Below are positions 354-33,032 of a stretch of DNA of 49,061 bases, in pieces; the stretch's first letter is position 1; each line of letters opens with the position of its first letter. Both the position numbers and the translations under genes were made by a program. This DNA comes from Intoshia linei (Eukaryota > Animalia > Orthonectida). The notes beneath the pieces were generated by a model that was not told where the DNA came from, did not search any database, and saw only the letters and a program-made list of their open reading frames with translations. The DNA is taken from NCBI GenBank assembly GCA_001642005.1, contig LWCA01000130.1:1-49061 (forward strand), read 5' to 3'.

Positions 354-835
354 TAATTTTCTTCTACTAACAATAAATTTTTTAATTTTTTGCTCAATAT
401 TCACTGATACTGAGACTATATATATTAGTATATTATTATATACTATATTATACATATATGCCATTTCAAATAACTTTTACAAGATGTTTGAAGTCTTTCA
501 AAATTAAAAAAATTTGAATTCAAAAGTTTTAAGACATTGAAATCTCCATCTATTTAAATTTTTGGAGAAAAATATACATTTTTGACCTTTACTCAAAAAC
601 GGTACTAAGAATTTTTAAAATACTCCTGAAAGTGTGCCAAATGAGAAAGTGTTGAAATTTTTGATGAGTAATTTTTTTAAACTAAATTTTAGTTCAGACA
701 GGTTGTGGGTAATTATTTAAATACAGCGTAACACACAAACAAAAATCGCGTAGCATATTATATAAGTTAGGATGTAATTAAAAATTTCAGTATTATTCAA
801 ACTGGAAAAATACTGTTGTCTTATACTGTCTATAG

Positions 836-3583: not shown

Positions 3584-6500
3584 TTATGCAAACATGTTTT
3601 CGTTGTCTACAGGTAATACAGCATCCTCAGAGGTTCCAAAATTTAAAAAGTGAGCAGGTCTGTGTACTTCATGATAAAAATTTTTAGGTGTACCAAGTAC
3701 GACATCATAGTGCATATTTACGTCGTGGCGAACTCCTATTTACAACATAAATATAATAGTTCATAATACATTACCCATAAAATTGTAATTCCAGGATACA
3801 TGAGTAGGTATCATGAAAAATCCCAAGAATCTATCACTAAGCAACATTTGGACACGTTCATAGTGAGTAGTCATGTAACCACGTGGATTAGCTCCTTTTT
3901 CAGTATTTGACCGACCCCATTCAAAACCACCAGGTGTAAGTTTGTAGGCAGCAAGAGAACACGACCCAGGCGTAAAACTAGAAACAATTATATACATATT
4001 AAAAACGTATACCTGCATGTCATAATAACTGACTTATCACCGTCCCATGATGGGTTATCTCGCATTATTTTAGCATGCATGGTTATGTCCTGAGGAGAAA
4101 GCTGCGGCAATTCATTCGGCTGAGTGTGAATCCAACCCAACGGTTCATAATCCTATATAAAGTTAAAAATATCCAAATAAATCAAAACCTCTAAATAAGT
4201 ATGCTTTGGTAATTGGTTGGGAACATAAACATTCTGGTGAGTTCCGATCTGAGGAACCATAACAATACATTTAATTTCTTTAACTGATTTATTATCCGGA
4301 GGACTAATTCCATACAAGTACCCACAAATCTGAACACGTAAATCTGAAATTACGATAAATTTTTTCAACAAATTTTTTGGCAATACATATGTATAACTTG
4401 TTTCCTTTAAATCTTCACTACTAACATAAATATGGTTGACTCTGAGATGCAAATTAGTTGAAGAAATTGCTCTAACTCTCCATTCGGTGCGCGAAGAAAA
4501 TATTTGAGCTTCATAATTACTAGTGGTTGTGGAAATAATAGAATCACCATGTTTATTCACGGTTTGCGTAGTAATGGCAGTTATTTGAGATTGCTCCGAA
4601 GATTGCTTTTCTATTTCTGCAATTTTTTGTCGGTCCTGGGAGGGTGCAGTGATTTCCATACCAAGTATAATGTCACGAATTTCCGATTGGGTTAGAGATG
4701 CCACATTAACATTATTTTTTTTACCATAATCAGCCAAAATTAAATCTTTTAATTGAACTTCAATTTTGACCCACTGTTCATCTGTCAAAGAAGGCCAAAC
4801 ATGGTGAGGTTCAACAGTAGTCAGTTTGTCTGGTCTCAATATCAACTTAGCTCTGTCATTATTTACATGCAACGCTCTTAATATGAGAATTAACCTGGAA
4901 AAAGCAGTATAAGAGGAAATAGATTTCAACCAATCATCATAAAGGTTGAATAGTACCATTTGAGGTTCTGTAGCTTTCAAAATTAAATCACCAAATTTTT
5001 CAACTTTCATGCATGCTTGGAAAGGAAGTTGCAATTCACTTCCTTTGATAACAATGTTTGGAAAATCGAGTAAGTGAACTTCTAACGGGTCTAACATACC
5101 TCTACGAGTGACAACAACTTGTTTAGGTTGTTCTTCTACAGGGAGTGATCTAATCAAAGCGGCAACTTCTTCTGCAGTTTTCCATTTGGCAAGTTGACTT
5201 AAACGTTTTTGTCCGGCCCATACAGATGTATGTATAATTTTTAAAAATAGTTGACCTGTCCTAGGATTAAAAATGAATATTGCGCCATTAATTGGTTTTG
5301 TTGTCAAATTACCTTCAAAAGTTTTATGGATTGTGACTCTATAGACATTTGTATCATCCACAAACCAAATTATTTGATTTGAGAAAAGTTCTCCGTAATT
5401 TTGGGATGATAAATAAGGCTCAGTCGGTTCTGATGAATATAATTGCAAACCTTTTCTAATTCTTTCTCTGAGTACATACAACGCCGGATTGGCTTTCATT
5501 ATTTTTGCCATAGCTTGCTGGATAAGAGGCTTTGTTCCGGGTATCCAATTTCCATAAGCACTGTGTAAATTGTAAGCCATGTCAACAGCAATCAATGCAC
5601 CATAAGGTGAAGGGTAGATACTCATATTATCAGTAGTATAATCCAAAAATTTAGCACGTGCATATCTCTCCACATCATGCGAATCAAAATCTCCCCACCT
5701 AAGCTGAACATCAATCCAATATTTTTGAGTGGTAGAGTTATCCATCGTATCTTTAGTGTCAAATAACAATGAAGGTCTAGAAACATTCCATTTATAAGAG
5801 GAAATTAACAAAATATCAGCACATGAGCTATTCATTTTATAAGATTTTCGAGGGTGTATAGTTTCTTTCTGTACTGTTTCTATACTAAGAGCATCTAATT
5901 CTTGGTCCAATACTTGACACAAATCCATAACTATACTTTCGTGTACTTTTTGCCATAAATGTGCACGGAAAATCTGAATTAAAGAAATTTTCAGAGTAGG
6001 AATTTTACCATGCATGAATATACCAGTTAGGTCAAGTTGTACTTGAAAACCAACATAAACATTTGCGCGATTAATTGTAGGAGACCACCATAGTGTAAAA
6101 CGTCGATTTGGTATTTGATTTAATCCAGCCCTTTGTGCATTTGTAAGTTTTTTAAATTTCATAGATTCTTCAAAGCCACTTGCTTTTTCCCAAAACAAGC
6201 CCTCCCATGTTGGAAAGTATGTTCCCTTAAACAAAGTATGCTCTAATATTCCTTCTACGCCACCAAGTGCTTGTATCATATCGGTTCGGTAATTATTTAA
6301 ATTCCACAATTTTCCGTCGTGTCGTTGGTGAGTCCACCAGAATGGATTTTGTCGTAAAACTTGATATTGTTTAAAATCTGTACGTACACGCCAACCCTTA
6401 TCATATGCCAAAGTATGTCTATCAACTTGAAACAAAGTGTTTATTCTTGGAATGCCTCTATCCCAACTGTCTTCCAAGTCTTCTAAAGTGAGACGTCTAT

Positions 6501-9500
6501 TCTGTGCATTCGCTTCTTGACGTTTCAAAGCATATTCGGCCCAAACACGCTGAGAATCAATAAACTCACTTTCCCAGGGCATGATATATCTGTACAAATT
6601 AGGAATTAATTGATCTTCATCGTGAGTCATACCTGATCTAAAATGGGTTATTCCAGTATCGGTTTGTTTAGACCACCTTAGATCCGAAGTAGGTATCAAT
6701 ACGTGACCCATACTCAACATACCAAGACCACCTAGTTCTTTAGGTGTATAAAATACAACGGGTGGAAATCTACTAGGCATTTTAGAATTGAGACCAATTT
6801 TTATTCTAGTTTGAATTTTATTTTCACATTTAACCAATAAATCTAATAATTCTTGAGTGTTTACTACAGCCTCTCTGAAATAAGTCATTAGTCCAATAAG
6901 AGAGGTATTCCATTTGTTCACAATTTTTGTAAAAGTAGTAGACCCTGATGCCATCAAAATTTGTCTTACTCTGTTATGAAATCTTTGAAGTGATTCATCA
7001 TCAACTCGCAAAAAGCATTGAGCTGTACGTTCCTTTGTTACTTCATTTTGTAAATTCCATACACCGTCCCTATGAGCAAATTCCTCATACGTCATTCTAC
7101 ATTTTGGTAATATGCGACATTCAAAGCCAGACATATTGAACAGTAAATTCGGATTGTCTTTACTATAAATTGAAACAAAATTAGAATTCCAGTTTATCGT
7201 TGTAATTGAACGTGGCAATCGGTTTTTCATATCCCAAAACACTGCTCGCCCCAAATTTACATCATGCTTCATAAGTCGCATACGAGCGTCCCGTGGCCAA
7301 CATTTCTTATTATTGTATCCAACAATATTTTCATTGTTGGGATCGGGGTGTTCAGTTAAATAGCGTTGTATCAAATCCTTAGCTTCATCTGCAGTAAATT
7401 TAAAAAGTATATGTAGTCGGTCAATATATCTGGAATAAAGACGTACGGGATGGACTTGTTCGGTTTCGATATCCTTATAAGTAAGAAAATCATTGGGCAT
7501 TTGAGGAGGACCTGCCATTTGTGAAGCACGTTGTAATCCGAGTAAAAGTAAATCTAGAACTAAACCATAATACTGAACTATAAAAGACGCGTACTGTAGA
7601 CCTCTAATTATTCCATAAGAATTAGTGTGATTCATATCCTTATAATTTATAACTATGTTATTCTTGGCAGTCATATAATCAGCTATATTGTGATCGACAA
7701 TAAGTCGCAACAATCTATTTAGAAGAGTTAAGTCAATTTTTTCCGTTACTTTTTCAAATTTTGTGTCCATCATGACAACACATTCACCATCATTAGTTTC
7801 CCAAATTTCTTGTAAATTATTAATACCCTGACACCATTTGTACACAAGCAATGGTGGAGGTTCTGAATCGGACGGTTTTATCCACGGAGGAAACAACCTT
7901 CTTTTATCAGCTTCGTACCATAAATACTGATCCAAATATGCATCAGTGATTTTTTCAAGAGGTTCTACTTCATAAATGGGTAAAAGATGGCTGTACAAAT
8001 CCATAAACTCGACGCCTATTTCTTTAAAAGCTCTCTGAGTAAGCAAATGTCGTTTGATTCTGGATAGTGCTTCATGAGGGTTGTCATATGCCTGTTCAAT
8101 TAAACCCAATTCTTCACGTTGAGCCTGATTTAATCTATTCTTAACACTATATGCTTCTTTTAACCTTTCCAAACACAAAATAAGTAACTTTGTGTCATGT
8201 TTATACGAAAGCGGAGGAAAAGGTATCGGAGAAAATCTACGACTTTCTAACCAATGCACAGTTGTAGTATATATTGCAACAGCTTCTTCTGCAGATATGT
8301 AGGGACCATCTTTTAAATAGTTGTGTTGTCTCTCTTGCTCTGCCTTTAGATATAATCTGGTGAGTCGTCCTAAATTTTTTTTACACACCGTTTTATCTAC
8401 CGTAGCTCCTCTTCGAATTCGTTCTCTGTTATAATGTGCTGTATTTGTCCACCAATCTGCTTTAGCTTTGACATATCTCAAAATAATATTTTCAATAGGA
8501 ATGGGTAGCCCAGGCACCTTCCAAGGTATATTAGCTTTCCAGCAACGCCAAGCTTCACTCAAATGCTGCAATATCGTTCTAGCTTTATTATGCTTGATAC
8601 CTTCTGGCATCATGTCCAGTATATCGTGCATTACTGCGGCTCTTAATTCTAAATCATAGTGACTTTCTACTCTTTGTTTCGTCACAGTTTTAGCAACGCC
8701 TTTGGAATGACGACCCTCGAATTGTCTGGACAATAAATTTCCTAACCATCTTTCCAATAATGGAGTGATGCCTCTCATAAAAAACAACCAAACCCTCCAC
8801 ATCGGTGCCCAAAATCCTACACCTGGTCCTTTACCAACGCTACCGGTATTAAATCTATAGTATATGACATGCTTCAAATCTTTGCACATCCTAATTTGTT
8901 TCATGAGTTTGTATTTATATCTGTACATCCCAGTTAATTGACCGACGTGAGAGAATATGTATTGAATACCATCAGCCAGCTGAAAAGCATCAACGTTACC
9001 TAACCTATACTGTACTTGGCTGTCCACAAGAAGTTTAGTCAAACGTAATATTTCACGACATAAGTGGAAAGCATTCCCAAACCTAGACTTTTTTCGTTCC
9101 TTAGTGGTCAAAGTTTTAACTGGCTTAAGGTTAAAATTGTAATCAAGATGAAGATAATTTAAATTTTTTCTATGAATAAGTAAATTCAACATATTATAGC
9201 CTTGACGACATACTTGTAAACCAGCTTCGACCCAGTCAATTTGAGTTGTTTGAAAAAATTTTGTAGATTTGAAGGATCTGAATAAGTATCTTCTTTTTTG
9301 AGATTTTGGTGGTCGTTTGTGCAAGCGATTTAGTACAAAATATTTCAAAAGTTTTTGATAGGATACACGGACTTTGACAGGCATACCTGAAGGACAATGT
9401 TCAGAGTACCAATTGTTTATCAATGGTATATCTATGGCTCTTCGAGTTCGATGAGATCGCATATTGAATGGTCTAGGTGCCCATAATAAAGCAATTCCAT

Positions 9501-12500
9501 TTGAAGTATTTTCGCTGTAGAGATTGTCATGCGACAAAAGTGTTCTAAAACCCTGAGGTAGAATAAATTCTTCATCGTCTTGCGATTCGAGAGCATCTAA
9601 TGTTCGAACGTTGTGGCGTTGGGTAATTGGATTTATCAAAGGGTCGAAATAAAATGCTGGCAAATCTGGATCTTCCGTTTTAATAAAAACAACATTTGGA
9701 GTGTGATATCTAAGAATATAAAATATATAATATACCAATCTTACTTTGATATTTGAACTTGAAAGGGTATACTATTATACAAATAGGGAAAAGCGATTCT
9801 ATATTCTGTTCTGATTGGTTGTCTAATAATTATTTTGTTTATATCATTGAATTCATTCCAATCCTCATCTCTAAAATCAGATAAATAACAAAATTAGACT
9901 AAAAATACTCCATGTTTTTCGATTTAACCAACGGTTCAAATTTTGGTCCACCAGGGATGGCCATGTTGAGAGCTTTGGCAGTAAAGAATGACTTTAAATC
10001 GAAGAGATAAAAGTAGTTGTCGTCTACCAAGTCTGTAAGGAGTTGATTTGAAAGTCGGTAAAGTGTTGAAATTTGATTTAAGGAAAGAAACCATTTTCGG
10101 TAAGAAGTTCCGTTTACATGTCTAAATATAAATAGTAATTTAGTGCACCATAAGTTATAGTTTAAATTATTTAAATTAACATATACACTGTGTAATGATA
10201 ACAATTACAACTGAATAAGGATTCTTAACCTTTTTTTACGAGCGTCTCCATTTTAAAATTAAAAAATTATTTACGACCCCACTATATTTTATTACTGACT
10301 ATATATAATTCAAATTTATTGAGTGCTGAAAAGATAAAAATCTAAATACAGGTAACCCGAGATTAGTGCAGTTAATCAATAGTAAATTAAAACCGCACTA
10401 ATCGAAGGTTACCTGCATATTATACATTTTTCAATGTCATTTTGATGTTTTTGGTGGAAATAGTTCAAAATTAGTATTTATATTGTAGACAATGGTTCTC
10501 AACGGTGAGCTAAGTGCCTCCCAGAGGAGAAATTATTTTAATTTAATTGTGTAGTGTGCAAAATATTTAACTTTAAAATAGGATTAGTGACTGTCATATA
10601 GATAATTTACAGATATGCACAAAATTATGACATAATGTATAAGTTAAAATTTAGTCATGAATGAACTGATTGGGGAGGAATTATAAAAAAGGTTGAGAAT
10701 CACTGTTGTAGACACTGCAATGGGGACTTGTTGATATAATAATAAATAATTGAATAAAATCACTTGATTTTAAAAATCTATTCGGTGAATCCAAAATGAA
10801 TCGTTTAATTTATTAACAAAATAGCATTAATTTATTTTATTTTATTAGTTATGATTTTTGCAAATTGAAAATTAAATTGGAGAATGATTTAAATCATTTA
10901 TCAATGAAAAATAAATTTCTTTTAATTAGGCTTGTATACACAAATACATGGAATATAACGAAATAAGTATATCTATGCAATATACTACGTACAATATAGC
11001 ACAAAATTCGAAAAAAACCAATGCGTATATTGGTGTCAATGATTATTAGAAATTTGAGATAAAACGTTGCAATTAGTAAGTCTGGTAAATTAACCTAATT
11101 TGCATTAAAGCAGATTTTACTAGATAAAACAAAAATAAAGCTACAATATAAAAGCAAACATTACAATTTTTACAAGATAATCAATAGTCATATGTTTACA
11201 CATAGAAAGATGATCATTACTAATGAAACTAAAATTTAACAAAGTAGTATAACAAAAAATAATTCACTCACATTAGAAATATGGGAATAAAAAGAGAACT
11301 GTTCGTAAAAAAACTAGACGAACATTTTCATTGTGGTATTTGCTTAGATGTATTCGAAAAAACCACCATATGTTGTTGTGGTCACAGCTTTTGTCAAGAA
11401 TGCATTTATAAGTGGGCCACAAAAACCGACAAAAAAGAGTACAAACTGAAAATAACGTGCCCTACGTGTAGACAATCCATATCACGTGATTTCTACCCAG
11501 TGTTAACCGTGGATAGTATAATAAATAGTCAAAATGTTCATTGTCAATATCAAAAGTTAGGATGTAAATCTATATTCAAACACTACGATTGGGACAAGCA
11601 CAATTGTACTTACACAGCTAAAAAAAATCAATTGTGTCGTAAATCTCTAAGAAAAGATTTGGACATAATAGAATCATGTATTGAACGATTGGAGGAAAAC
11701 ATTGTACTCATACGAGAGCAAATAAAAAAGACAACAGATCTTATCAAACTAAACGGAAATCAGTTACTAGTATTCAAAACACAAGTAGAACTGTCTGACA
11801 GTTAAGCAAAATAAAAAATACTTTGAATCCAATAGTGGTTTATGATGATAAAACCATTTAAAAACAGATTTATCCTCATTTTCATCCAAAGGAATTTGAA
11901 TCGCTTCTAACGGTTCAGCATCCAAAACATTATCTCCGTAATCAAGAGGTGGTTCTTCGTCATCAAAAGGTGGAAATCTCATCCTCTTAAAATGACGCCT
12001 ATCTCTTTTTTCACGTCTCATCATAATCCACATAGTTCTATAAAAATAAATTTTTAATTACAATGATTGTTACCCCCATTGTGCCAAATATACTGGTTCG
12101 ACGATCCAAGGAATTTCATTGACAAACGTTATAGCACCAGTGACATGATACAGTACGTTCACATCTCGGATTTGTTCCCATGGCATAGGCATATTCTCTA
12201 GTAATTTCATAATTGCATGTGGCATGTATTTCAGTGCACTAATTCATAATTTATAAAAATAGTATTTTTTTATACCCCAAGTAAACTCTTTTATCGTGTC
12301 TAAATTTTCGACTTGTCAAATCGCCATGATCCTTTATAATCTTTCTCACATGTTCAGGTGGCATATCTTCTTTCTGTATGTCTACATATCCAAATTTTCT
12401 TTTCTCGCTGTATTTTTGTGACTGCAATTGCTGCCATTTTTGCGCTGTATTAAAATTAGAAAAATTTATAAATTACAAACATTTTTCTTGAAGCTGAATA

Positions 12501-12517
12501 TCATTTAATTGTCTCAT
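3584..12517 (-). CDS. PRPF8: Pre-mRNA-processing-splicing factor 8 (U5 snRNP), about 2313 aa, 10 exons
   Basis: Near-identical Prp8 motifs (KWQQLQ...[56 protein letters not shown]). Exons 12517-12481, 12444-12276, 12238-12074, 12037-11822, 10121-9909, 9870-9745, 9709-4189, 4152-4013, 3977-3775, 3735-3584 sum to 6942 nt in frame. All introns are GT-AG, 35-39 nt except the 1700-nt intron 4. Confidence 0.98.
10349..10415. mobile_element. Minimal 67-bp Tigger/pogo-type MITE (almost pure TIR hairpin) in PRPF8 intron 4
   Basis: caggtaacccgagattagtgcagtt ... aaccgcactaatcgaaggttacctg: 25-bp inverted repeats with 4 mismatches, CAGG terminus and TA on the left flank. Confidence 0.7.
10490..10705. mobile_element. 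hAT (Charlie/MER5-like) MITE in PRPF8 intron 4
   Basis: Ends caatggttctcaac / ggttgagaatcactg. The 8-bp direct repeat ttgtagac occurs at both flanks (10483-10490 and 10706-10713). Confidence 0.75.
11281..11805 (+). CDS. Intronless C3HC4 RING + TRAF/Sina-type zinc finger + coiled-coil E3 ligase (RNF41/RNF151/PDZRN-like), nested antisense in PRPF8 intron 4
   Basis: 174-aa ORF with CGIC...CGHSFCQEC...CPTC RING, then VHC...GC...H.C zinc finger and a heptad-rich C-terminus. The N-terminus [18 protein letters not shown] resembles RNF41/RNF151-type starts. AATAAA at 11810-11815. Confidence 0.85.
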
Positions 12518-12657
12518 ATTATTTTAATACATGAACTGATGATTAAGTTTATATTTTCGAGTGATAAATTATAAATGTGTACTTTATTACTATGCATATT
12601 ATATGGTTACGCAAAAAAAATTTATTTAAATTGAAAATACGATACATGAAATGGACA

Positions 12658-13284
12658 TTATTTTGATTTAGGATCTCGCATCAGATTAGCAAATTCTAAA
12701 AATATTTGTAAAACTTGTAATAATATGTACCATCAAAACTAATTTTTCCGTCCCCATCCAAATCTGCTTGTTTTACCTATTTTTGGATATTAATGTTAAC
12801 ATTGTATTTACCATTTGATCTGCTTCTTCGTCTGTTATTTTGTCTCCTAATTTGTTCATTACGTATTTCAACTCTTTAGCGTTTAAATACCCGTCACCAT
12901 CTCGATCAAATAATAGAAAAGCATCTTTAATCTCTTTGTCTGAATCAGCCTGTTGCATAATTTTTGCAAGCATGTAGGTAAATTCTTCTATATCTATTTC
13001 GCCGTTACCTGTCTACGATTAGTTTAATAGGTGGTATAGTACCATCGACGTCGACCTCTGCAACCATTGTTATAAGTTCTTCTTCGCTTGGCTAAAATTA
13101 TATTTATTGTATTTTTTAGTTTTACTTTTTGTCCTAAAGCATGCATGACAATTCCTAATTCCTTTACAGTGATGGACCCGTCACCGTCTTTATCAAACAA
13201 TGCAAATGCTTCTCGTATTTCGGACAATTCTTCTTCACTAAAATCGTGCATTATTCTATTCATTTCTTCGATATCGACCGCCAT
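12658..13284 (-). CDS. Calmodulin-like four EF-hand protein (5 exons)
   Basis: The spliced product has four canonical EF loops ([48 protein letters not shown]) and ends [12 protein letters not shown]. It is too divergent for canonical calmodulin. Confidence 0.9.
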
Positions 13285-22559: not shown

Positions 22560-24079
22560 TTTAAATCTAGTTTGAAGTATTCATATTTTTTAGTACACAA
22601 CAGATGAATAAATTTCAAAGAAATGAAACCAGCTGCACCTTTCTAATACTAGGATTTTAAACTTTTGCAGGTGTTTTATTTTATTTGAATTTTTTTCGCT
22701 TTTCTGTAGAAAATCTCTAGCTGACCATTTAACAAATGTATTTTTAGTATTCTATTTTCATTTAATATACATTTTACCACAAAGGAATGGCTATGCGAAT
22801 CTACTTTAATTGCAACTTTGAACTAAAGGTTCAATAAAATAAAGAGTAAATTAATTAATAATTAATTATAAATGCATAATACACATTATTAACGACTTTA
22901 CAATGCATTTTTATACACCGAATATTTAACAAGCCAATGCCACTCTTATTGGTATAAAATATAAAAAGACTGATAGCCACATATACAAATGTACTAACTG
23001 AACCATAAAAATGTTACGAAAAGCGCAATGTTACGCAATATGCAAAACATTTTAAAAAAGGAAATGAATAGCGAAGATTGTGGTGGATTAAAAAAGTTTA
23101 AAGCCAGTGATGGATAGATAAGGTCATTCAAACGTAAGTATGATATGTTATATAAAACGTTGTCTGGTACGAAAGCATCATTTAGTCAAAATGATATTGA
23201 TGATTTCTTTCATATTTTCAAAGATAAATTAATTGGGTATGAATTAAAGGACATTTTTAATGCCGATAAAACTGCACTATATTATAAAAAATTGCCTACG
23301 AAAAGCTACATCTTTAGTGCACAGGAATCTACTAAAAAGATTAAAGACAATAAAGATAGAATGACAATTTTACTCAACTGTAGTGCTCTTGGTGAAAAAA
23401 TCAAACCGTTATTCATTGGAAAAAGTGCCAAACCACGGTGTTTCAAGGGATTAAATATGAATGAATAACCTTTATATTATGAAAGTAATTAAACAGCTTA
23501 GATTACAAGTTGAATATTTCAAGATTATATGGATAACACTAGACAACAAAATGAAAACTTTTTTCGAGGATCAGCATGAGACCCATACAAATAAAAAGCT
23601 GAAATTTTGCTGATCAACATGATACTTCTCTTTTTAATTTTACAGTTCGCTATCAAAAGATAATGATTGACAACATCATAGCAACTAAGCTATTTCAATT
23701 AATTTTAGTTTTTTAATTTTAAATTTAATTATAGTATATAATGAGATATTTAAATTTTTTTTTCAATATATATGAAATTGATAGCGGATAATTACATGAT
23801 CACATTTAAATTAAAAAGAAATGAATATTAAACAAATTACAGGTGTACAAAAATTTAACTGATGACAGGCGCTTTAATAGGATGAAGATCTGATATGAGC
23901 TATAATCAACCTTTTAACAATACATTCTAGTGTCTAAATCCAGATTTACGGAATAGATTTAGTTCGATATTTTTAGCTATTGATATTTAAAAAAAATATA
24001 TTAATAAATTTAATTTTTTTTCATTTAATTTATCAGTATACATTGAAACAACTGTTTCTTGAGATAATAATGGCTCGGA

Positions 24080-24450
24080 TGATGAAACTAAATTATATAC
24101 TTCCATTGGAATTGGTAAAGTTGAACTTTTGGTGGCCGGATAAGAGTAAAAGCTTAATTTATTCAGGCTTTATTTTCTTCTTTTCAGAATACAGAAATAG
24201 CAGTCATTCGCACTTTCTGAATGTTTCCATATTCTAGGTGTCACAAATCTCTTTTTAAATCTCATTATAGACGAATGGCACGTTTGATATAGATTTGAAG
24301 GATTTCAAAGTTGATTCTCGTACATTAAACTGTATATTTCCATTATCAAATTTTTACATTTATCAGTTATAGTAACATTTTTTAGTGTTTGGCAAATATA
24401 TACCACATCAAAAGCAATAATATGTTTCGTTTATTTCATAGACATGCATT
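24080..24450 (-). pseudogene. N-terminal fragment of a Chapaev-like transposase inserted in the Tigger remnant
   Basis: The minus strand reads YYCF*CGIY...TPRIWKHSESANDCYFC...YSYPATKSSTLPIP, matching the recalled PxIW...DCYFC...YP...P.P motif of Chapaev3-type transposases. Confidence 0.6.
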
Positions 24451-25591
24451 TTAAATTAATAAATAAATATTCAAACTTAAAAAACTTCACCTTTTTTAAA
24501 GTAAACATTATTTTGAATGATATAATTGGTCAATTTTAGAATTGAAGTGAAACTTTGTTATATTTTTTTTAACATTAAAAGTGTTAATAAATGGGTGATA
24601 TGAATTATAACTTATAAATATATTATATCATTAAAATCAGCGCTATATTATCCACAAGATGGTATTATTTTTATGCAGATGTATTTTTCAGTGTTGTCTA
24701 GTGTAATTTAAATTATTTATTTTACAAAACTAATAGAAAGGTTCTTATTTTGATAGACAAGGCTACATGCCATTCTGAAATGAAATTATATAATGCTGAT
24801 ACAATGTTTTTACCTACCAATACAACATCTATGTTACAACTATCAAGGTGTAGTCTGGTCGTTTAAGTTTATTTATACACAGATATATATTAGAAATTTG
24901 ATTAACAAAGAAAACCTTAAAATCAAAAATATGAGAGGAATCACTATTCTTGACGACATATTATATTCCGTTGAAACTTGGAATAAAGAAACGATTCAAA
25001 ACTGTTTTAAAAAACAGATGTTATTAATGTGGAAAATTACCAATCCAACACTTAGTCAAATACGATCGTATCAGAATAGGAAATGTTGAGTCTATAGTTA
25101 ACAGAACTTAACTCGTATAACTATAATGTAACTATTTGATTTGAAAGATGCTGAACAATATAGCGATAATTACAATTTTGATGGGTTAGAATTTTTAATT
25201 GATAAAGAATTTGAATAAAATAGCCAGGAATTTACAAATATGGACGAATTATCAAGTAAAACCATTTGGAATTCGGAAGATGATATCACAAATTCTGACT
25301 ATATTAGGTATACGGTATTAATTGATCAACTAAAATCGATGATATCAAAAATATGTCCGAATAGTTTAATTAATATTTACTCGATAGAAAATGAATTTCA
25401 CGAAAAACTATCAAAGAAGAAAAGACAAATAAAAATATTTGAACATTAAGTTTTGTATAAAAAATAATAAATTTTTGTGAATTTATTAGAAATGAAATGA
25501 AAATAAAAAAAATTTATTATTTGAACGTATAGCACATTATTTATAAAAAACTTGTTAAAAACAATGTTTTTACAAAAAAATTCCTCGTTAA

Positions 25592-27688: not shown

Positions 27689-29497
27689 ATGATGAAATCC
27701 AATTCTAAACAAAAATCTCCTAAAAAATTTTCATTACAAACAAGCAATAGCATATCTCCAAATCCTTCATTCAATGATGCAACCCAAGCACCTTTGATCG
27801 ACGATATTGAATCACAAAGAGATTACAACCACGATACAACTGAAAATAATATTGAGTCTACTGATGCAGTGTCTATATCTAAAGAATATTTGACTAATTT
27901 TCTTAAAAATGATCCTTTGTTATCAGGTAAATATTTGTCAACAGAAAATATTAAAATTACACCATATTCATTAAACACTTTTAAATCGAAACCCCGGCAC
28001 TCCTGGGAAATCCATAGTCTGAGCGACGTGGACAGATTTAATCTGATGATGCAGAGCTTATGCTCCAATGAAACGGAAAGAATATATTTTATTTTCGGAG
28101 AGTTGTCACGCATCTCAATTGAGATTGTATGTAGTTACCACAATCTGTCTGGTACTAATTTAACAAGTTCAGATATTATAGATATTTTACGTAAACATTT
28201 TATCAATAAAAATAATCGGGGCCAAGAACGGTATAACTTTATGAACATGCGTCAAACTGATGACGACCGTGTGCAAGATTATTATGTCAAGTTACGCACA
28301 GCCGCAAATGGGTGTGAGTGGGGTGAAATCGAAGAATCATTAATTGTTGATGCTTTACTTAATACCACGAAATGTAGCTCTAAAATACCTATCGATATAT
28401 ACAACTCCAGAAAAATATCTGCAGATGAAGTTTTAGAAACATTGTCATCTCTTGAAAATAGAGAAACACCGATTGCATTGCCAAAGAGTCCCATAAATGA
28501 ATGTCCCACCAAGCCAAACTTGTCCGATCTCAACAAAAACCCTATTATAAACTCTCCTTTTTCCAGTGGCTTTGAAGTGCTATATCTATCACCCGGTTTG
28601 ATTGATAAACAGTTAAAATTACAAATTAGTATAGACAGACAATTTGCTAGTAATTCCGACTCTACGTTCGTACAGAAAGTTCCTGCCGGTATGAGTTATA
28701 GTGAATTTGTGGAACGAGAGTATATTGACGGCGGAAATGAAAAATATACTCAAAATCCTTTATTTAAACTTATTAAATTTTTGGCTCAATGTGACAATTG
28801 TTTTTGGGCAAATAGTCTATCTCAACAATATCTACCACGTATTCCAGTTAAATTTGATGAATTGGTAGAAAAATTTAAAGCCATCAATCCTCAAATATTT
28901 ATTAATTTTGATGAAAAAGATCAGCCGTCAGAAGAACTTTGTCAAGTTTGCCGCTACATTCACATGTCCATCCTTAGTAATTGTTAATATTTTATTTTTT
29001 AACATTAAAATAGTGAAACTACAGCTTCGCCATAAAGAGGCCGGATCAAATAACTTCACAGTTCAAAATGCGGCAGATGTATTATTGCTGTAATTTTTTA
29101 ATTAATGAAAAATTTAGAATGTCTCCGGTTTAAAACGGTACAACACTGAACAAATTATCTATACTCCAGATTCAAAAAAGAAAAGATTTCTTACTCGAGA
29201 TGTTTACTTGTCTATATAGTTTATATTTAAATTTAGGCTACAACTATAATGATGAAGTGGTTGAGAGAGCACAGAAATAATCCATATCCTAATGAGTACG
29301 AAAAAGAACAACTTTTACGTCAAACAGGAATTAAGAAATCACAACTAAATTATTGGTTCGTCAATGCTCGTAGAAGAATCATGAAATCCTGGTCATCTAA
29401 TGATTCAGAAAAAATAATTGAAAATGACTCTCCTCCAAAACCTACCAACACCTCATCCCCTAATTTAAAAAAAGAAACCGAACCCATTAAAACGTAA
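27689..29497 (+). CDS. TALE-class homeodomain protein with an N-terminal retrotransposon Gag-like domain and a MEIS/PADRE-like domain (567 aa, 4 exons)
   Basis: Exons 27689-28982, 29014-29078, 29118-29201 and 29237-29497 (GT-AG introns of 31, 39 and 35 nt) sum to 1704 nt in frame. TALE homeodomain KKKRFLTRDATTIMMKWLREHRNNPYPNEYEKEQLLRQTGIKKSQLNYWFVNARRRI. Gag-like segment at about aa 100-257; NPLFKLIKFLAQCD at about aa 356. Confidence 0.85.
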
Positions 29498-29528: not shown

Positions 29529-30536
29529 TTAACATTTAAGCCAAGGGTGATTTTTAATAGCATTTTTTGATCTATCTCCATAATCATACATAATTTCTTC
29601 ACCTATGTCTATGTGCTTGAAACTTACAAAGTACAATCTCGGTTTTCCTTCTACTGTAATCGTTTTTGATACTACATTTTTTTTTTTTGCAGAGTGGTTG
29701 ATCAATCTACCCAATCTTTGTGACTCTTTAGTTGCATCTATGCTAACAAATATATATACAAATAAATATAAAAATACCAATATGATTTTCCACTATACTT
29801 AAAATAGTACATGTAACATCCAAATGAATCGCATTTAACATAATCGGATTCTCTCTTTTTTGCTTCTTTGACAGTTACAAGTTCTCCAGCATATTCTACT
29901 ATAAAATCTCCACGATTAAATACAACTTTAGAAACAATTCCTCTTCCTTTATTGTCAAAATGTTCAACCTAAAAAACATTGAATTGTACTTACAGTGATA
30001 CCTTTAGATTTTGTTCATCGTTCCCATCCTTTATATTTTGATATAAAATTAATTGTTTTTGTTCCTTTCATAATGAATGTAAATTAATAGATTTTATACC
30101 TGAATACTCTTTTCGGTTTTTCTGTTACTTCTCCTCACATAAAAAAAAGAAGATATTGAATTACGTTTCATATCATCCTTGTTCCCATTTTTTTTACTTT
30201 GCTTCGAAATTTTTTTCTTTTTATCAATTATGCTGTTAATTTCGACAGATGTTTCATTATCGCATAATGTCTTGTCTTTTTCATCTTGGATTTTTATTTC
30301 GGTTGTATTTATACTATTTTCAATGCTGTTGGTTAAAGTGATAACTGATAAAGCATCAGAAGCAGAGTTAGAAATTGACTTTTTACTATTACAATCATTG
30401 ATTAAACTTGCACCATCATTTAAGTTTTTATTTTTCGTTTGTTTCGCTAAAAATAAAAATAATTTTCATTTAAATTTTTACCTGATTTTTTGTTGCATTT
30501 TGGTGAAAAATAGTTTGTAATTGTTTTTAGTTTCAT
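29529..30536 (-). CDS. KMT5A: Histone H4K20 methyltransferase PR-Set7/SET8
   Basis: KGRGIVS...FNRGDFIVEYAGEL, GCYMYYF, IDATKESQRLGRLINHS, EIMYDYGDRSKNAIKNHPWLK. Degron-like SSFFYVRRSNRK. Probable start MKLKTITNYFSPK at 30536. Confidence 0.92.
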
Positions 30537-31157: not shown

Positions 31158-33032
31158 ATGGATGTTACCAACCGCCCCTTTAAAATATCAAAGGAATTTT
31201 TGAAATATGCAGAGGAAAACAATCTATTTGATTTATTCACAGTATAAAATATTTAACTATTATCATGAATTTTAGGATTTATTTCAAAAAATCATAATAG
31301 ATAAACCGCTTGACCCTTTGTTATATATACAAGAATACATGAAAGATGATTTGAAATTGAATAGTAACGTATAAACTACATTTTACAAATCTTTGTAGTT
31401 CCAAAAATATGCATAATAGGACCACCTGCTTCTGGGAAGTGTACAGTATCAAACTTATTATCCTTTCAGTTATCTGCCATCCACATAGATAGAACTGAAA
31501 TATTAAACAATGCATCCACAGATTTTATGAAAGAAATTAACGAATATGATGCGTGGGTATAACAATTAATTATAATTAATCACATTGATATTAGGATATC
31601 CCCATCGATTTGTGGGTGCGTCTTCTTTCAGATCGTCTCAAATATAGTGATTGTGTCAATAATGGTTATGTCTTGGAAAATATACCTTCATCCTTAGAGG
31701 AATGCTTGTTAATACAAGAAAGTGGAATTATAATAAACAATTGCAGTAGATTTTATATTTTTAAATCTATATTTTGATTTTAGTTGTTTTAAATACCGAA
31801 GATAGTGTTCTGGTCGAAAGATCCATAGGAAAACGAGTCGACCCTATTACAAATGGTTAATTTGTTAAAATTCGTAGATAAATTATATTAGATATTTATC
31901 ATTTAACGTTTGACCCTCCTCGTACTATGGATGTAGCGCGTCGTTTGATACAACCAGAAAATAATGGAATTGAGAGAATCAAGGAAAGATTAGAAGAATA
32001 CAGAAAACTAGAAAAAAAATTAAAAAAATATTATAAACATATTATGAGTGAATTTAATGTAGATATGCCAAAAGAAGATATTTTTACAAAAGGTAAAAAC
32101 ATTTTGAAAATATAATTCGAATACATGATTAGTTTTAATCCACATACACACATTTAAAAAGAATATTTCTCCATTGAAACCGAGAATATTAGTTTTGGGA
32201 CCAATAGGATCTGGTAAAAAATATCAATGTGAATTATTGGCCAACAAATATGGATTTGTCAATTGTAAATATTTAAAAAATGTATTTAATGTCTAAATCA
32301 TAAATTATTTTATGTTTTTACTTTCAGATCCAATTTTTTTATGTATGTTCTAAATTATAATTATTAGTGTCCAGTGGTACATTGATAAAGGAGGAAATGT
32401 GTAAAAGAAGTGATATTGGGATAGCTTGTCAAAATTATGTAGACAATAACAAACAGAGTAATTTTAATATTTACGGGGGAATATACATAATCTACATGTT
32501 TAGTTCCCGATGTCCTCGTCAACAAAATAATGGACGAACGGTTGAGTCGAAATGATTGTATTTATAAAGGATGGGTTTTACGTGGATTTCCTAGAAATAT
32601 TGATCAAGCATTAATGCTTACGGAGAAAGGATTCAATCCGACTAGGTTTAAGCCAAAGCGCATTAAAAAATCAATAATTTAGAGTGTTTATGTTTGACAT
32701 CAGTAAAGAAAGTATATTGGAAAGATTAACATTAAAGCGAATAGATCCCTTGACAGGTAACATTAAAAATATTATTACAGTATATTTTAGGAAACAAATA
32801 TCATTTGCTTTTTAATCCACCATTGGACGAACTAGTAAATGACCGATTATTAACTCACTTATGCGACTCAAGCGAATACATATTCATGAAAATTGATAAA
32901 TATTTAAATTATATTGAAGTTTTGAAAGATTTGTACAAAAATATAATTCAACAAATAAATGCAGATCAACCAGCAAATACTATTTTTGAATTGTTAGAAA
33001 GTTGGATCATAAAGGCTATTATAAAGGATTAA
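31158..33032 (+). CDS. AK8: Adenylate kinase 8 (two AK domains, many short introns)
   Basis: N-terminus MDVTNRPFKISKEFLKYAEENNLFDLF. Two P-loops (IIGPPASGK, LGPIGSGK), KRVDPIT...YHLTFDPP, KGWVLRGFPRNIDQA, and INADQPANTIFELLESWII. Confidence 0.88.

What the first reader, a model, noticed from the sequence alone, without database searches (positions are those of the whole stretch)
27689..29497. Retrotransposon Gag capsid-like domain fused in frame to a TALE homeodomain transcription factor
Seen in sequence: aa ~100-257 of the 432-aa ORF (nt ~27986-28459) read ...DIIDILRKHFINKNNRGQERYNFMNMRQTDDDRVQDYYVKLRTAANGCEWGEIEESLIVDALL...ISADEVLETLSSLE. Three canonical 31-39 nt introns join this ORF in frame to a PYP/WFxNARRR TALE homeodomain (567 aa total). 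Established knowledge: the segment follows the Ty3/gypsy Gag capsid pattern (L..HF......ER..F..R.Q...E....Y...LR..A..C.FG...I.D), including the major-homology-region-like Q...E...Y..L motif. I see no zinc knuckle, protease, RT, integrase or LTR nearby, and the frame is intact whereas every other TE in the window is broken. Inference: a domesticated capsid domain captured by a homeobox gene, analogous to SCAN (capsid-derived dimerisation domain on zinc fingers) or Arc/PNMA/PEG10. It might oligomerise the factor or form particles. I do not know of a described Gag-TALE fusion.
Basis: partly seen in the sequence, partly recalled or inferred. Interest (0 to 1): 0.92.

Follow-up and report, generated by a model that had tools for sequence, protein, structure and literature searches.

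The report
Retrotransposon capsid inside a homeobox gene
In the parasitic worm Intoshia linei, an apparently unannotated MEIS/PREP-type homeobox gene carries a complete retrotransposon capsid domain in frame within its main coding exon, but whether the capsid part is expressed or useful has not been tested.

Summary
The window is the whole contig LWCA01000130.1 of the orthonectid Intoshia linei.

**Capsid part.**
- ORF 27689-28987 (432 aa) is real.
- Residues ~91-260 are homologous to Ty3/gypsy Gag (phmmer E down to 4e-12; 43 Gag or Gag-Pol hits).
- With an alignment they fold confidently (pLDDT 89) into a two-lobed, all-helical domain.
- The leading structural matches are retroelement capsids: PNMA2, Copia, MLV, dArc1/2, HIV CA, PEG10.
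- There is no zinc knuckle and no LTR. tblastn with Ty3/gypsy polyproteins found no protease, RT or integrase, and no second copy in the window.

**Host context.**
- The capsid block is flanked on both sides by sequence shared with a Gag-less paralogue in the same genome (OAF65286.1). It therefore sits inside a host coding exon.
- Three introns of 37 (or 31), 39 and 35 nt match the 34-39 nt class seen in ten of twelve introns of the contig's PRP8 model. They link the ORF in frame to a TALE homeodomain closest to PKNOX1/MEIS.

**Limits.**
- There is no transcript evidence and no orthologue, so no dN/dS. Genome-wide copy number could not be checked.
- The locus appears unannotated.
- GC3 of the block is raised, which hints at a fairly recent arrival.

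**Verdict.** A genuine in-frame Gag-capsid/TALE chimera, analogous to SCAN zinc fingers. Domestication is plausible but not shown.

The parts
27689..28976 (+). Exon 1 of the proposed gene. This is ORF1, which reads on to a stop at 28985-28987 if unspliced.
   Evidence: donor choice
27758..27958 (+). N-terminal host segment (aa 24-90), weakly but colinearly similar to aa 29-96 of the I. linei paralogue P0001
   Evidence: E 0.02; Smith-Waterman score 63 against a shuffle mean of 40 +/- 6; 1 of 500 shuffles reached it
27959..28468 (+). Ty3/gypsy Gag-derived capsid block (aa 91-260). Nine predicted helices at ORF aa 111-259 form two lobes. The family-invariant L202 and C209 and the near-invariant N176, R181, F184 and Q189 are kept.
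28469..28591 (+). Linker (aa 261-301). Proline, asparagine and serine are common, there is no CCHC knuckle, and GC3 is 0.41. It may be a remnant of the Gag CA-NC spacer.
   Evidence: P0004 tblastn alignment reaches 28576
28592..28975 (+). Pre-homeodomain region (aa 302-429), 36% identical to the C-terminal 126 aa of paralogue P0001. By eye it resembles the MEIS/PREP HM domain, but Pfam does not detect it.
28977..29013 (+). Intron 1, 37 nt, GTAATT..AAATAG, phase 1. The paralogue has GTATGT at the homologous codon.
29014..29078 (+). Exon 2 (65 nt: two bases of a split codon plus 21 codons)
29079..29117 (+). Intron 2, 39 nt, GTATTA..ATTTAG, with in-frame stops
29118..29201 (+). Exon 3 (28 codons). 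Its end (KKKRFLTRD, from 29175) supplies the basic N-terminal arm of the homeodomain.
29202..29236 (+). Intron 3, 35 nt, GTTTAC..ATTTAG. It splits the homeodomain.
29237..29497 (+). Exon 4: the rest of the TALE homeodomain (to 29386, with the PYP loop and WFVNARRR), a short Ser/Pro/Lys tail, and the stop codon
29529..29780 (-). Last exon of a convergent SET-domain gene. It bounds the 3' end of the TALE gene, with 31 nt between the two stop codons. It is not part of the feature.

Best explanation
**What it is.** The locus is a lineage-specific paralogue of a MEIS/PREP-type TALE homeobox gene of Intoshia linei. The variable middle of its large first exon has been replaced by, or filled with, a fragment of a Ty3/gypsy gag gene. 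The fragment runs from a few residues after the Gag start to the end of the capsid, and stops before the zinc knuckle.

**Predicted product.** About 565 aa, in this order:
- host N-terminal segment
- two-lobed capsid domain
- linker
- conserved pre-homeodomain region
- TALE homeodomain

**What is shown.**
- The capsid homology and predicted fold.
- Its position in one open frame between two host-derived segments.
- The homeodomain class.
- The fit of the three introns to the genome's 34-39 nt intron class.

**What is inferred.**
- The four exons are spliced as proposed. I put the architecture at about 0.8.
- The protein is made.
- The capsid part serves as a self-association module that dimerises or oligomerises the factor, as the capsid-derived SCAN domain does for vertebrate zinc-finger factors. 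I put this function at about 0.35.
For: **Capsid identity.**
- phmmer E 4e-12 to 1e-3 against 43 proteins; those scanned with Pfam include Gag and Gag-Pol proteins.
- The family profile hits dArc1 and PNMA2 capsid chains.
- AF2 pLDDT 89.1. The leading Foldseek PDB matches are retroelement capsids at probability up to 1.00, including the PEG10 CTD (TM 0.69). The viral library gives mostly Gag and caulimovirus coat proteins.
- 18 of 29 family-conserved columns are identical, and most of the rest are conservative changes.

**One open frame.** 432 codons with no stop, against 0 of 20,000 shuffles.

**Host sequence on both sides.**
- aa 302-429 are 36% identical to I. linei OAF65286.1 (E 1e-22).
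- aa 24-90 are colinear with its aa 29-96 (1 of 500 shuffles reached the score).
- The capsid part has no counterpart in that protein or in its locus.

**Not a transposon copy.** No LTR, no polyprotein match other than Gag, and no second copy in the window.

**Homeodomain.** Homeobox_KN E 1.2e-18. The best solved relatives are PKNOX1 and MEIS1/2 (3e-13), ahead of TGIF and PBX. Exon 4 starts at about residue 5-9 of the MEIS homeodomain constructs, so exon 3 is needed to complete the domain.

**Introns.** Ten of twelve introns of the annotated PRP8 model on this contig are 34-39 nt, and one uses a GTT donor. The intron 1 position is shared with the paralogue.
Against: - There is no transcript evidence of any kind.
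- No protein holding ORF1 or the homeodomain exon is in the searched collections, although other I. linei proteins are. The genome's annotators apparently did not call this gene.
- The only homologue of the host part is a paralogue without the capsid. No conservation of the fusion across species is shown, and dN/dS is impossible.
- GC3 of the block is 0.35, against 0.25 in the flanks (p 0.009) and 0.27 in PRP8 (p 0.015). The step at aa ~91 is sharp, as expected of sequence that has not yet drifted to host composition.
- Several strongly conserved family positions are changed: G140S, P173N, L238Y, L245A.
- Pfam does not recognise a Meis_PKNOX_N domain.
- Self-association is argued by analogy only.
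Confidence: 0.55

Rival explanations
1. Tolerated passenger. A gag cDNA fragment was captured in frame in the dispensable, low-complexity middle of a redundant TALE paralogue. It may be translated but does nothing useful, or the whole paralogue is at an early stage of decay. The frame is open because the event is recent, not because it is selected.
For: - The raised GC3 and its sharp step at aa ~91 suggest incomplete amelioration.
- The paralogue carries about 300 aa of unrelated low-complexity sequence at the same place, so this region tolerates almost any content.
- The gene is not in the annotated protein set.
- No orthologue shows retention.
Against: - Everything else of the element is gone: knuckle, protease, RT, integrase and LTRs. 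The remainder is trimmed close to the domain borders.
- Key fold positions are kept and the segment models confidently.
- 211 codons of inserted block without a stop in an AT-rich genome.
Confidence: 0.3
2. The capsid block is not in the mature protein. It is removed as an unusually long intron, or transcription or translation starts downstream. The nearest internal Met codons upstream of the conserved region are M187 and M189, which would leave only the C-terminal capsid lobe.
For: No transcript data exist. The gene is not annotated. I did not scan for alternative GT..AG pairs around the block.
Against: - A spliced-out or untranslated 630-nt block should drift to about 25% GC and fill with stops. 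It has 36% GC and none.
- The N-terminal segment upstream of the block is shared with the paralogue, so it is coding.
- Ten of twelve introns in the contig's PRP8 model are 34-39 nt, and the published genome-wide median is 57 bp (PMC6543705).
Confidence: 0.1
3. The gene model or the assembly is wrong. Either ORF1 and the homeodomain exons are separate genes, or the contig is a chimeric join of a transposon and a homeobox gene.
For: The splicing is inferred only. The paralogue's contig ends before any homeodomain, so linkage of the conserved region to a homeodomain is seen only here.
Against: - Exon 4 alone lacks the N-terminal arm of the homeodomain, which exon 3 supplies in frame.
- All three introns are in phase and of the genome's usual size.
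- A convergent SET gene leaves no room for another 3' end.
- An assembly join that keeps the frame at both borders is unlikely.
Confidence: 0.05

Closest known systems
SCAN-domain zinc-finger transcription factors of tetrapods (capsid C-terminal lobe of a Gmr1-like Ty3/gypsy element fused to C2H2 fingers; PMC8321522)
   Same: A Ty3/gypsy Gag capsid piece is captured in frame by a DNA-binding transcription factor, and the zinc knuckle and pol are lost. SCAN works as a dimerisation module, which is the function proposed here.
   Different: SCAN keeps only the C-terminal lobe, whereas here both lobes are present. The partner is a TALE homeodomain, not C2H2 fingers. This is a spiralian single-copy case, not a large conserved family. 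There is no Pfam SCAN match. Selection and expression are shown for SCAN but not here.
Arc / dArc1 / dArc2, PNMA2, PEG10 and RTL genes (stand-alone domesticated Ty3/gypsy gag genes)
   Same: They share the two-lobed capsid fold and are among the leading sequence-profile and structure matches. Pfam PNMA is a weak hit.
   Different: Those are free-standing Gag-like proteins that form capsids and are conserved across many species. Here the capsid is an internal domain of a transcription factor with host sequence on both sides, which may hinder shell assembly.
Crtg10-KELP and Crtg14-PEX14 (co-opted gag genes fused to host genes in plants and fungi; PMC8321522, read)
   Same: A gag-derived coding sequence is fused to a host gene. 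KELP is a transcriptional co-activator.
   Different: The kingdoms and partner domains differ, and those fusions are conserved above the family level with expression data.
MEIS / PREP (PKNOX) class TALE homeodomain proteins
   Same: The homeodomain is closest to PKNOX1 and MEIS1/2 and has the PYP loop and WFxNARRR. A conserved region lies upstream of the homeodomain where the HM (PBX-interaction) domain sits, and by eye it shows HM-like motifs. That comparison is from memory and is not a test.
   Different: Pfam Meis_PKNOX_N is not detected. The protein is very divergent. To my knowledge, no known MEIS/PREP protein carries a capsid domain.

Membership tests
Ty3/gypsy (Metaviridae) Gag capsid, Pfam Retrotrans_gag PF03732 | Match to the Pfam model at its gathering score | tested here: not met
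   19.4-19.8 bits against a cut-off of 24.1, E about 1e-3, aa 162-221
Ty3/gypsy (Metaviridae) Gag capsid, Pfam Retrotrans_gag PF03732 | Significant sequence homology to Gag of elements with the order Gag-PR-RT-RNaseH-INT | tested here: met
   phmmer E 4e-12 (P0002), 6e-11 (P0003, a 2520-aa polyprotein with that order), and 43 hits in all. P0002, P0003, P0005, P0007 and P0009 themselves pass PF03732.
Ty3/gypsy (Metaviridae) Gag capsid, Pfam Retrotrans_gag PF03732 | Two-lobed all-helical capsid fold | tested here: met
   AF2 pLDDT 89.1 with nine helices. Foldseek finds PNMA2, Copia, MLV, dArc1/2, HIV CA and PEG10 CTD at probability up to 1.0, but E is only 3e-3 and whole-chain TM is 0.4-0.5.
Intact or decaying LTR retrotransposon copy | CCHC knuckle, protease, RT, integrase or LTRs adjoining the gag | tested here: not met
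   No knuckle after the capsid. No polyprotein match outside the capsid. No direct repeats of 25 nt or more that could be LTRs.
MEIS/PREP class of TALE homeobox genes | 63-residue TALE homeodomain with a three-residue loop (PYP) and WFxNARRR, closest to MEIS/PKNOX | tested here: met
   Homeobox_KN E 1.2e-18. PDB best hits are PKNOX1 2.8e-13 and MEIS1/2 3e-13, against TGIF 2e-10 and PBX 2e-8. The N-terminal arm lies in exon 3. The joined domain itself was not searched.
MEIS/PREP class of TALE homeobox genes | HM / Meis_PKNOX_N domain upstream of the homeodomain | tested here: inconclusive
   No Pfam hit at E<=10 for aa 258-432, for aa 302-429, or for the paralogue's region, and no PDB hit. HM-like motifs are seen by eye only, compared with MEIS1 recalled from memory.
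MEIS/PREP class of TALE homeobox genes | Orthology by phylogeny of the homeodomain | not tested
Domesticated (co-opted) gag gene | Retention at an orthologous locus in other species under purifying selection | not testable with these tools
   The only relative of the host part in 1.84 billion proteins is a paralogue in the same genome that lacks the capsid. No other orthonectid genome could be searched.
Domesticated (co-opted) gag gene | Expression as a host transcript | not testable with these tools
   No RNA data were available. The locus is absent from the protein collections.
Domesticated (co-opted) gag gene | Single or low copy number, not a member of an active repeat family | tested here: inconclusive
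   Unique within the 49-kb contig. No hit is above 41% identity, and none of the 20 hits whose sources were looked up is from I. linei. The I. linei assembly itself could not be scanned.
SCAN domain | Match to the SCAN profile; C-terminal capsid lobe only | tested here: not met
   SCAN is not among the Pfam hits at E<=10, and both lobes are present.

The most novel reading that the evidence does not exclude
An independent, spiralian parallel to SCAN: a complete two-lobed Ty3/gypsy capsid domain exapted inside a MEIS/PREP-type homeodomain factor. It would drive homo-oligomerisation, or even higher-order lattice-like assembly, of a developmental transcription factor in one of the most reduced animals known.
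Probability: 0.3. Interest if true: 0.75.

Novelty: new variant of a known kind. Interest (0 to 1): 0.55.

Why it matters
Capture of a Gag capsid by a DNA-binding factor is known mainly from the vertebrate SCAN zinc-finger family.

A second, independent capture would show that capsid domains are recurrent building blocks for transcription-factor self-association. This case differs in three ways: the capsid is whole, the partner is a homeodomain, and the host is a highly reduced spiralian parasite. It would also offer a simple system in which to ask what a capsid does inside a nuclear factor.

The finding also adds an apparently unannotated TALE gene to a genome reported to have one of the smallest homeobox repertoires (PMC6543705). 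If the capsid is instead only a tolerated insertion, the case is a modest curiosity about how coding exons absorb transposon fragments.

Tried and rejected
- **Single-sequence AlphaFold of the whole ORF.** Useless: pLDDT 33.5.
- **Word-indexed homologue searches.** Searches with ORF1 and with the homeodomain exon found nothing.
- **Exact look-ups.** ORF1, the RING ORF and a 220-aa ORF were not on record.
- **Phage-collection search.** An irrelevant slip; no match.
- **Orthologue assumption.** I first took P0001 for an orthologue from another species.
- **Pre-homeodomain region.** Searches against Pfam and PDB gave no hit.
- **Conserved repeat.** Rfam and tRNA scans found nothing.
- **Mikhailov et al. 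2016 genome paper.** Not held in the library.
- **Exact intron boundaries for PRP8.** A script meant to derive them for all introns failed on split codons. I relied on gap lengths and on five junctions read by eye.
- **Joined model left out.** The exons were handled one by one by reference, and the 565/567-codon total is arithmetic only.
Full report
**Source of the window.**
- The 1861-aa ORF on the minus strand (4156-9738) is PRP8. Its best match is 'Splicing factor Prp8 [Intoshia linei]' at 100% identity, on a contig of 49,061 bases, which is exactly the window length.
- The record is LWCA01000130.1 of assembly GCA_001642005.1.
- The window is therefore a whole contig of the orthonectid Intoshia linei, a highly reduced spiralian parasite. 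It is not human.
- The contig is AT-rich: 22-38% GC per kilobase, about 25% between genes and about 35% in exons.

**The ORF.**
- None of 20,000 base shuffles of the ORF, or of the capsid segment alone, stayed open. The other five frames of the capsid segment carry 4-21 stops.
- An in-frame stop lies nine codons upstream of the ATG.

**The capsid domain is real.**
- *Pfam.* It gives only sub-threshold hits: Retrotrans_gag at 19.4-19.8 bits against a cut-off of 24.1, and PNMA.
- *Exhaustive search.* phmmer against 1.84 billion representative proteins returned 44 proteins at E<1e-3, and 43 of them align to aa ~92-282. Of the ten scanned with Pfam, several are Gag or Gag-Pol proteins. P0003 has the order Gag, protease, RT, RNase H, integrase, which is the Ty3/gypsy order.
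- *Origin of the hits.* Those with names come from beetles, a pseudoscorpion, a nemertean, amphibians, sea urchins and a myxozoan. Identities are 20-41%. None of the 20 whose sources were looked up is from I. linei.
- *Extent of the match.* The alignment runs from the conserved tryptophan near the Gag N-terminus (W106) to the end of the capsid at about aa 260. The relatives go on into CCHC knuckles that the window protein lacks.
- *Conserved positions.* Of 29 columns conserved in at least 60% of the family, 18 are identical here and most others are conservative changes. Four strongly conserved positions are altered: G140S, P173N, L238Y and L245A.
- *Predicted fold.* With a 36-sequence alignment, AlphaFold2 models aa 95-265 at mean pLDDT 89.1 as nine helices in two lobes.
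- *Structural matches.* The leading Foldseek matches in the PDB are retroelement capsids: PNMA2, Copia, MLV, dArc1, dArc2, HIV-1 CA, RSV and the PEG10 C-terminal lobe (TM 0.69 over 86 residues). Probabilities reach 1.00, but E-values are modest (best 3e-3) and whole-chain TM is 0.4-0.5, which I attribute to a flexible hinge between the lobes. The viral library gives mostly retroviral Gag, caulimovirus coat and metavirus ORF1, with an occasional unrelated hit.
- *Sequence profile.* The family profile also finds dArc1 (1e-5; lobes only 1e-4), dArc2 and PNMA2 chains by sequence.

**It is not a transposon copy.**
- tblastn of all hits against the window, including five polyproteins of 1270-2520 aa, matches only 27794-28576.
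- ORF1 has no second copy in the window.
- No direct repeats that could be LTRs flank the gene.

**Host sequence lies on both sides.** The one non-Gag hit, P0001 (E 5e-16), is OAF65286.1, a partial hypothetical protein of I. linei on contig LWCA01001362.1. It is therefore a paralogue in the same genome, not an orthologue.
- Its last 126 residues align to ORF1 aa 302-429 at 36% identity (E 1e-22).
- Its aa 29-96 align colinearly with ORF1 aa 24-90. The score is 63 against shuffles of 40 +/- 6, and 1 of 500 shuffles reached it.
- Between these two segments the paralogue has about 300 residues of low-complexity sequence with no similarity to the capsid (z = -0.1). Its locus holds no Gag.
- The Gag N-terminal motif begins right after the shared segment, at about aa 91.
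- Third-position GC steps there from 0.13-0.27 to 0.50. Over aa 91-301, GC3 is 0.351 against 0.246 in the flanks and later exons (Fisher p 0.009), and against 0.270 in PRP8 (p 0.015).
- I read this as a gag fragment captured in frame into, or in place of, the variable middle of a host coding exon, with composition not yet fully ameliorated.

**Link to the homeodomain.**
- Exon 4 (29237-29497) scores Homeobox_KN at E 1.2e-18 and carries PYP and WFVNARRR.
- Its closest solved relatives are PKNOX1 (2.8e-13) and MEIS1/2 (about 3e-13), ahead of TGIF (2e-10) and PBX (2e-8). The match starts at about residue 5-9 of the MEIS homeodomain constructs, so the basic N-terminal arm must come from upstream.
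- Exon 3 ends with that arm, in frame.
- The three introns are GT..AG, 37 (or 31), 39 and 35 nt long, and contain stops.
- As an internal control, the annotated PRP8 model on this contig has twelve introns, ten of them 34-39 nt. Five junctions read directly have AT-rich donors, one of them GTTTTG.
- The published median intron for the species is 57 bp, with most introns above 30 bp (PMC6543705).
Both are phase 1, but 28977 is at the codon homologous to the paralogue's GTATGT donor. In both genes the putative acceptor is followed by TG, so the split codon would read ATG.
- A convergent SET-domain gene ends 31 nt beyond the TALE stop codon, which fixes the 3' end.
- The 565 (or 567) codon total is arithmetic.

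**Class of the host gene.** The homeodomain points to MEIS/PREP.
- The conserved region at aa 302-429 sits where the HM domain would be. By eye it shows two HM-like motifs in the right order, but that comparison is with MEIS1 recalled from memory.
- Pfam finds no Meis_PKNOX_N domain in it or in the paralogue, and the PDB holds nothing similar.
- I treat membership of that domain family as open.

**What is missing.**
- No protein containing ORF1 or the homeodomain exon is in the collections that do hold other I. linei proteins. The locus seems to be unannotated.
- I had no access to RNA data, to the rest of the I. linei assembly, or to any other orthonectid genome. Expression, genome-wide copy number, conservation and dN/dS are all untested.

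**Interpretation.**
- I hold the architecture to be right at about 0.8: a capsid inside a TALE gene, in one reading frame.
- A function for the capsid part, most plausibly self-association by analogy with SCAN, is inferred at about 0.35.
- The main rival is a recent, tolerated in-frame insertion in a redundant paralogue. The GC3 step and the Gag-less paralogue favour that rival. The clean loss of every other element part, the domain-level trimming and the well-kept fold core argue against it.
- Removal of the block by splicing or by a downstream start is unlikely, given its coding-like composition and open frame.
- Mis-joining or assembly error is unlikely, given the split homeodomain and the in-phase introns.

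**Literature.**
- Two full-text searches combining TALE homeobox or homeodomain with gag terms returned only unrelated papers.
- A survey of co-opted gag genes across 2,011 eukaryotes lists Arc, dArc, RTL, PNMA, SCAN and eight new cases. Host fusions appear only with KELP and PEX14, and the paper does not mention homeobox genes (PMC8321522).
- The case is best filed as a new variant of a known kind, namely Gag-capsid capture by a transcription factor.

Noticed in passing
window 3587-13284 (-), with 11281-11805 (+): The GenBank PRP8 model (2430 aa) carries EF-hand domains and two odd introns of 349 and 1700 nt, while its other ten introns are 34-39 nt. An intact RING-finger ORF on the opposite strand lies inside the 1700-nt 'intron'. 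The model probably fuses an upstream EF-hand gene to PRP8.
   Followed up: partly
window 449-716; L001 3384-3644 and 2051-2223: An interspersed repeat of about 270 nt is about 95% identical between this contig and two inverted copies on another I. linei contig. There is no Rfam or tRNA match. It may be a MITE- or SINE-like element.
   Followed up: partly
window ~23145-25450 (+): Fragmented ORFs resemble a pogo/Tigger-type DDE transposase (DDE_1, E 1.5e-3, below gathering). This is a broken DNA-transposon remnant, and the assembly's annotation calls a 176-aa gene starting near 23028.
   Followed up: partly
window 29529-29780 (-): Last exon of a SET-domain gene (SET E 4.8e-9; KMT5A/SET8-like by eye), convergent with the TALE gene. 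Only 31 nt separate the two stop codons.
   Followed up: partly
window 32174-33032 (+): A string of short exons has weak, below-gathering AAA_17 and adenylate-kinase (ADK) matches (E 6e-3 and 1e-3).
   Followed up: no
L001 9157-9483 (I. linei contig LWCA01001362.1): The paralogue's gene model ends at 9155, just before a GTATGT donor. A possible 33-nt intron and a short exon follow, and then the contig ends. Whether that paralogue also has a homeodomain is unknown.
   Followed up: partly
window 28787-28798 and 28940-28951 (ORF1 aa 367-370 and 418-421): Two CxxC pairs lie in the pre-homeodomain region. They are not conserved in the paralogue, so they are probably not a metal site.
   Followed up: no
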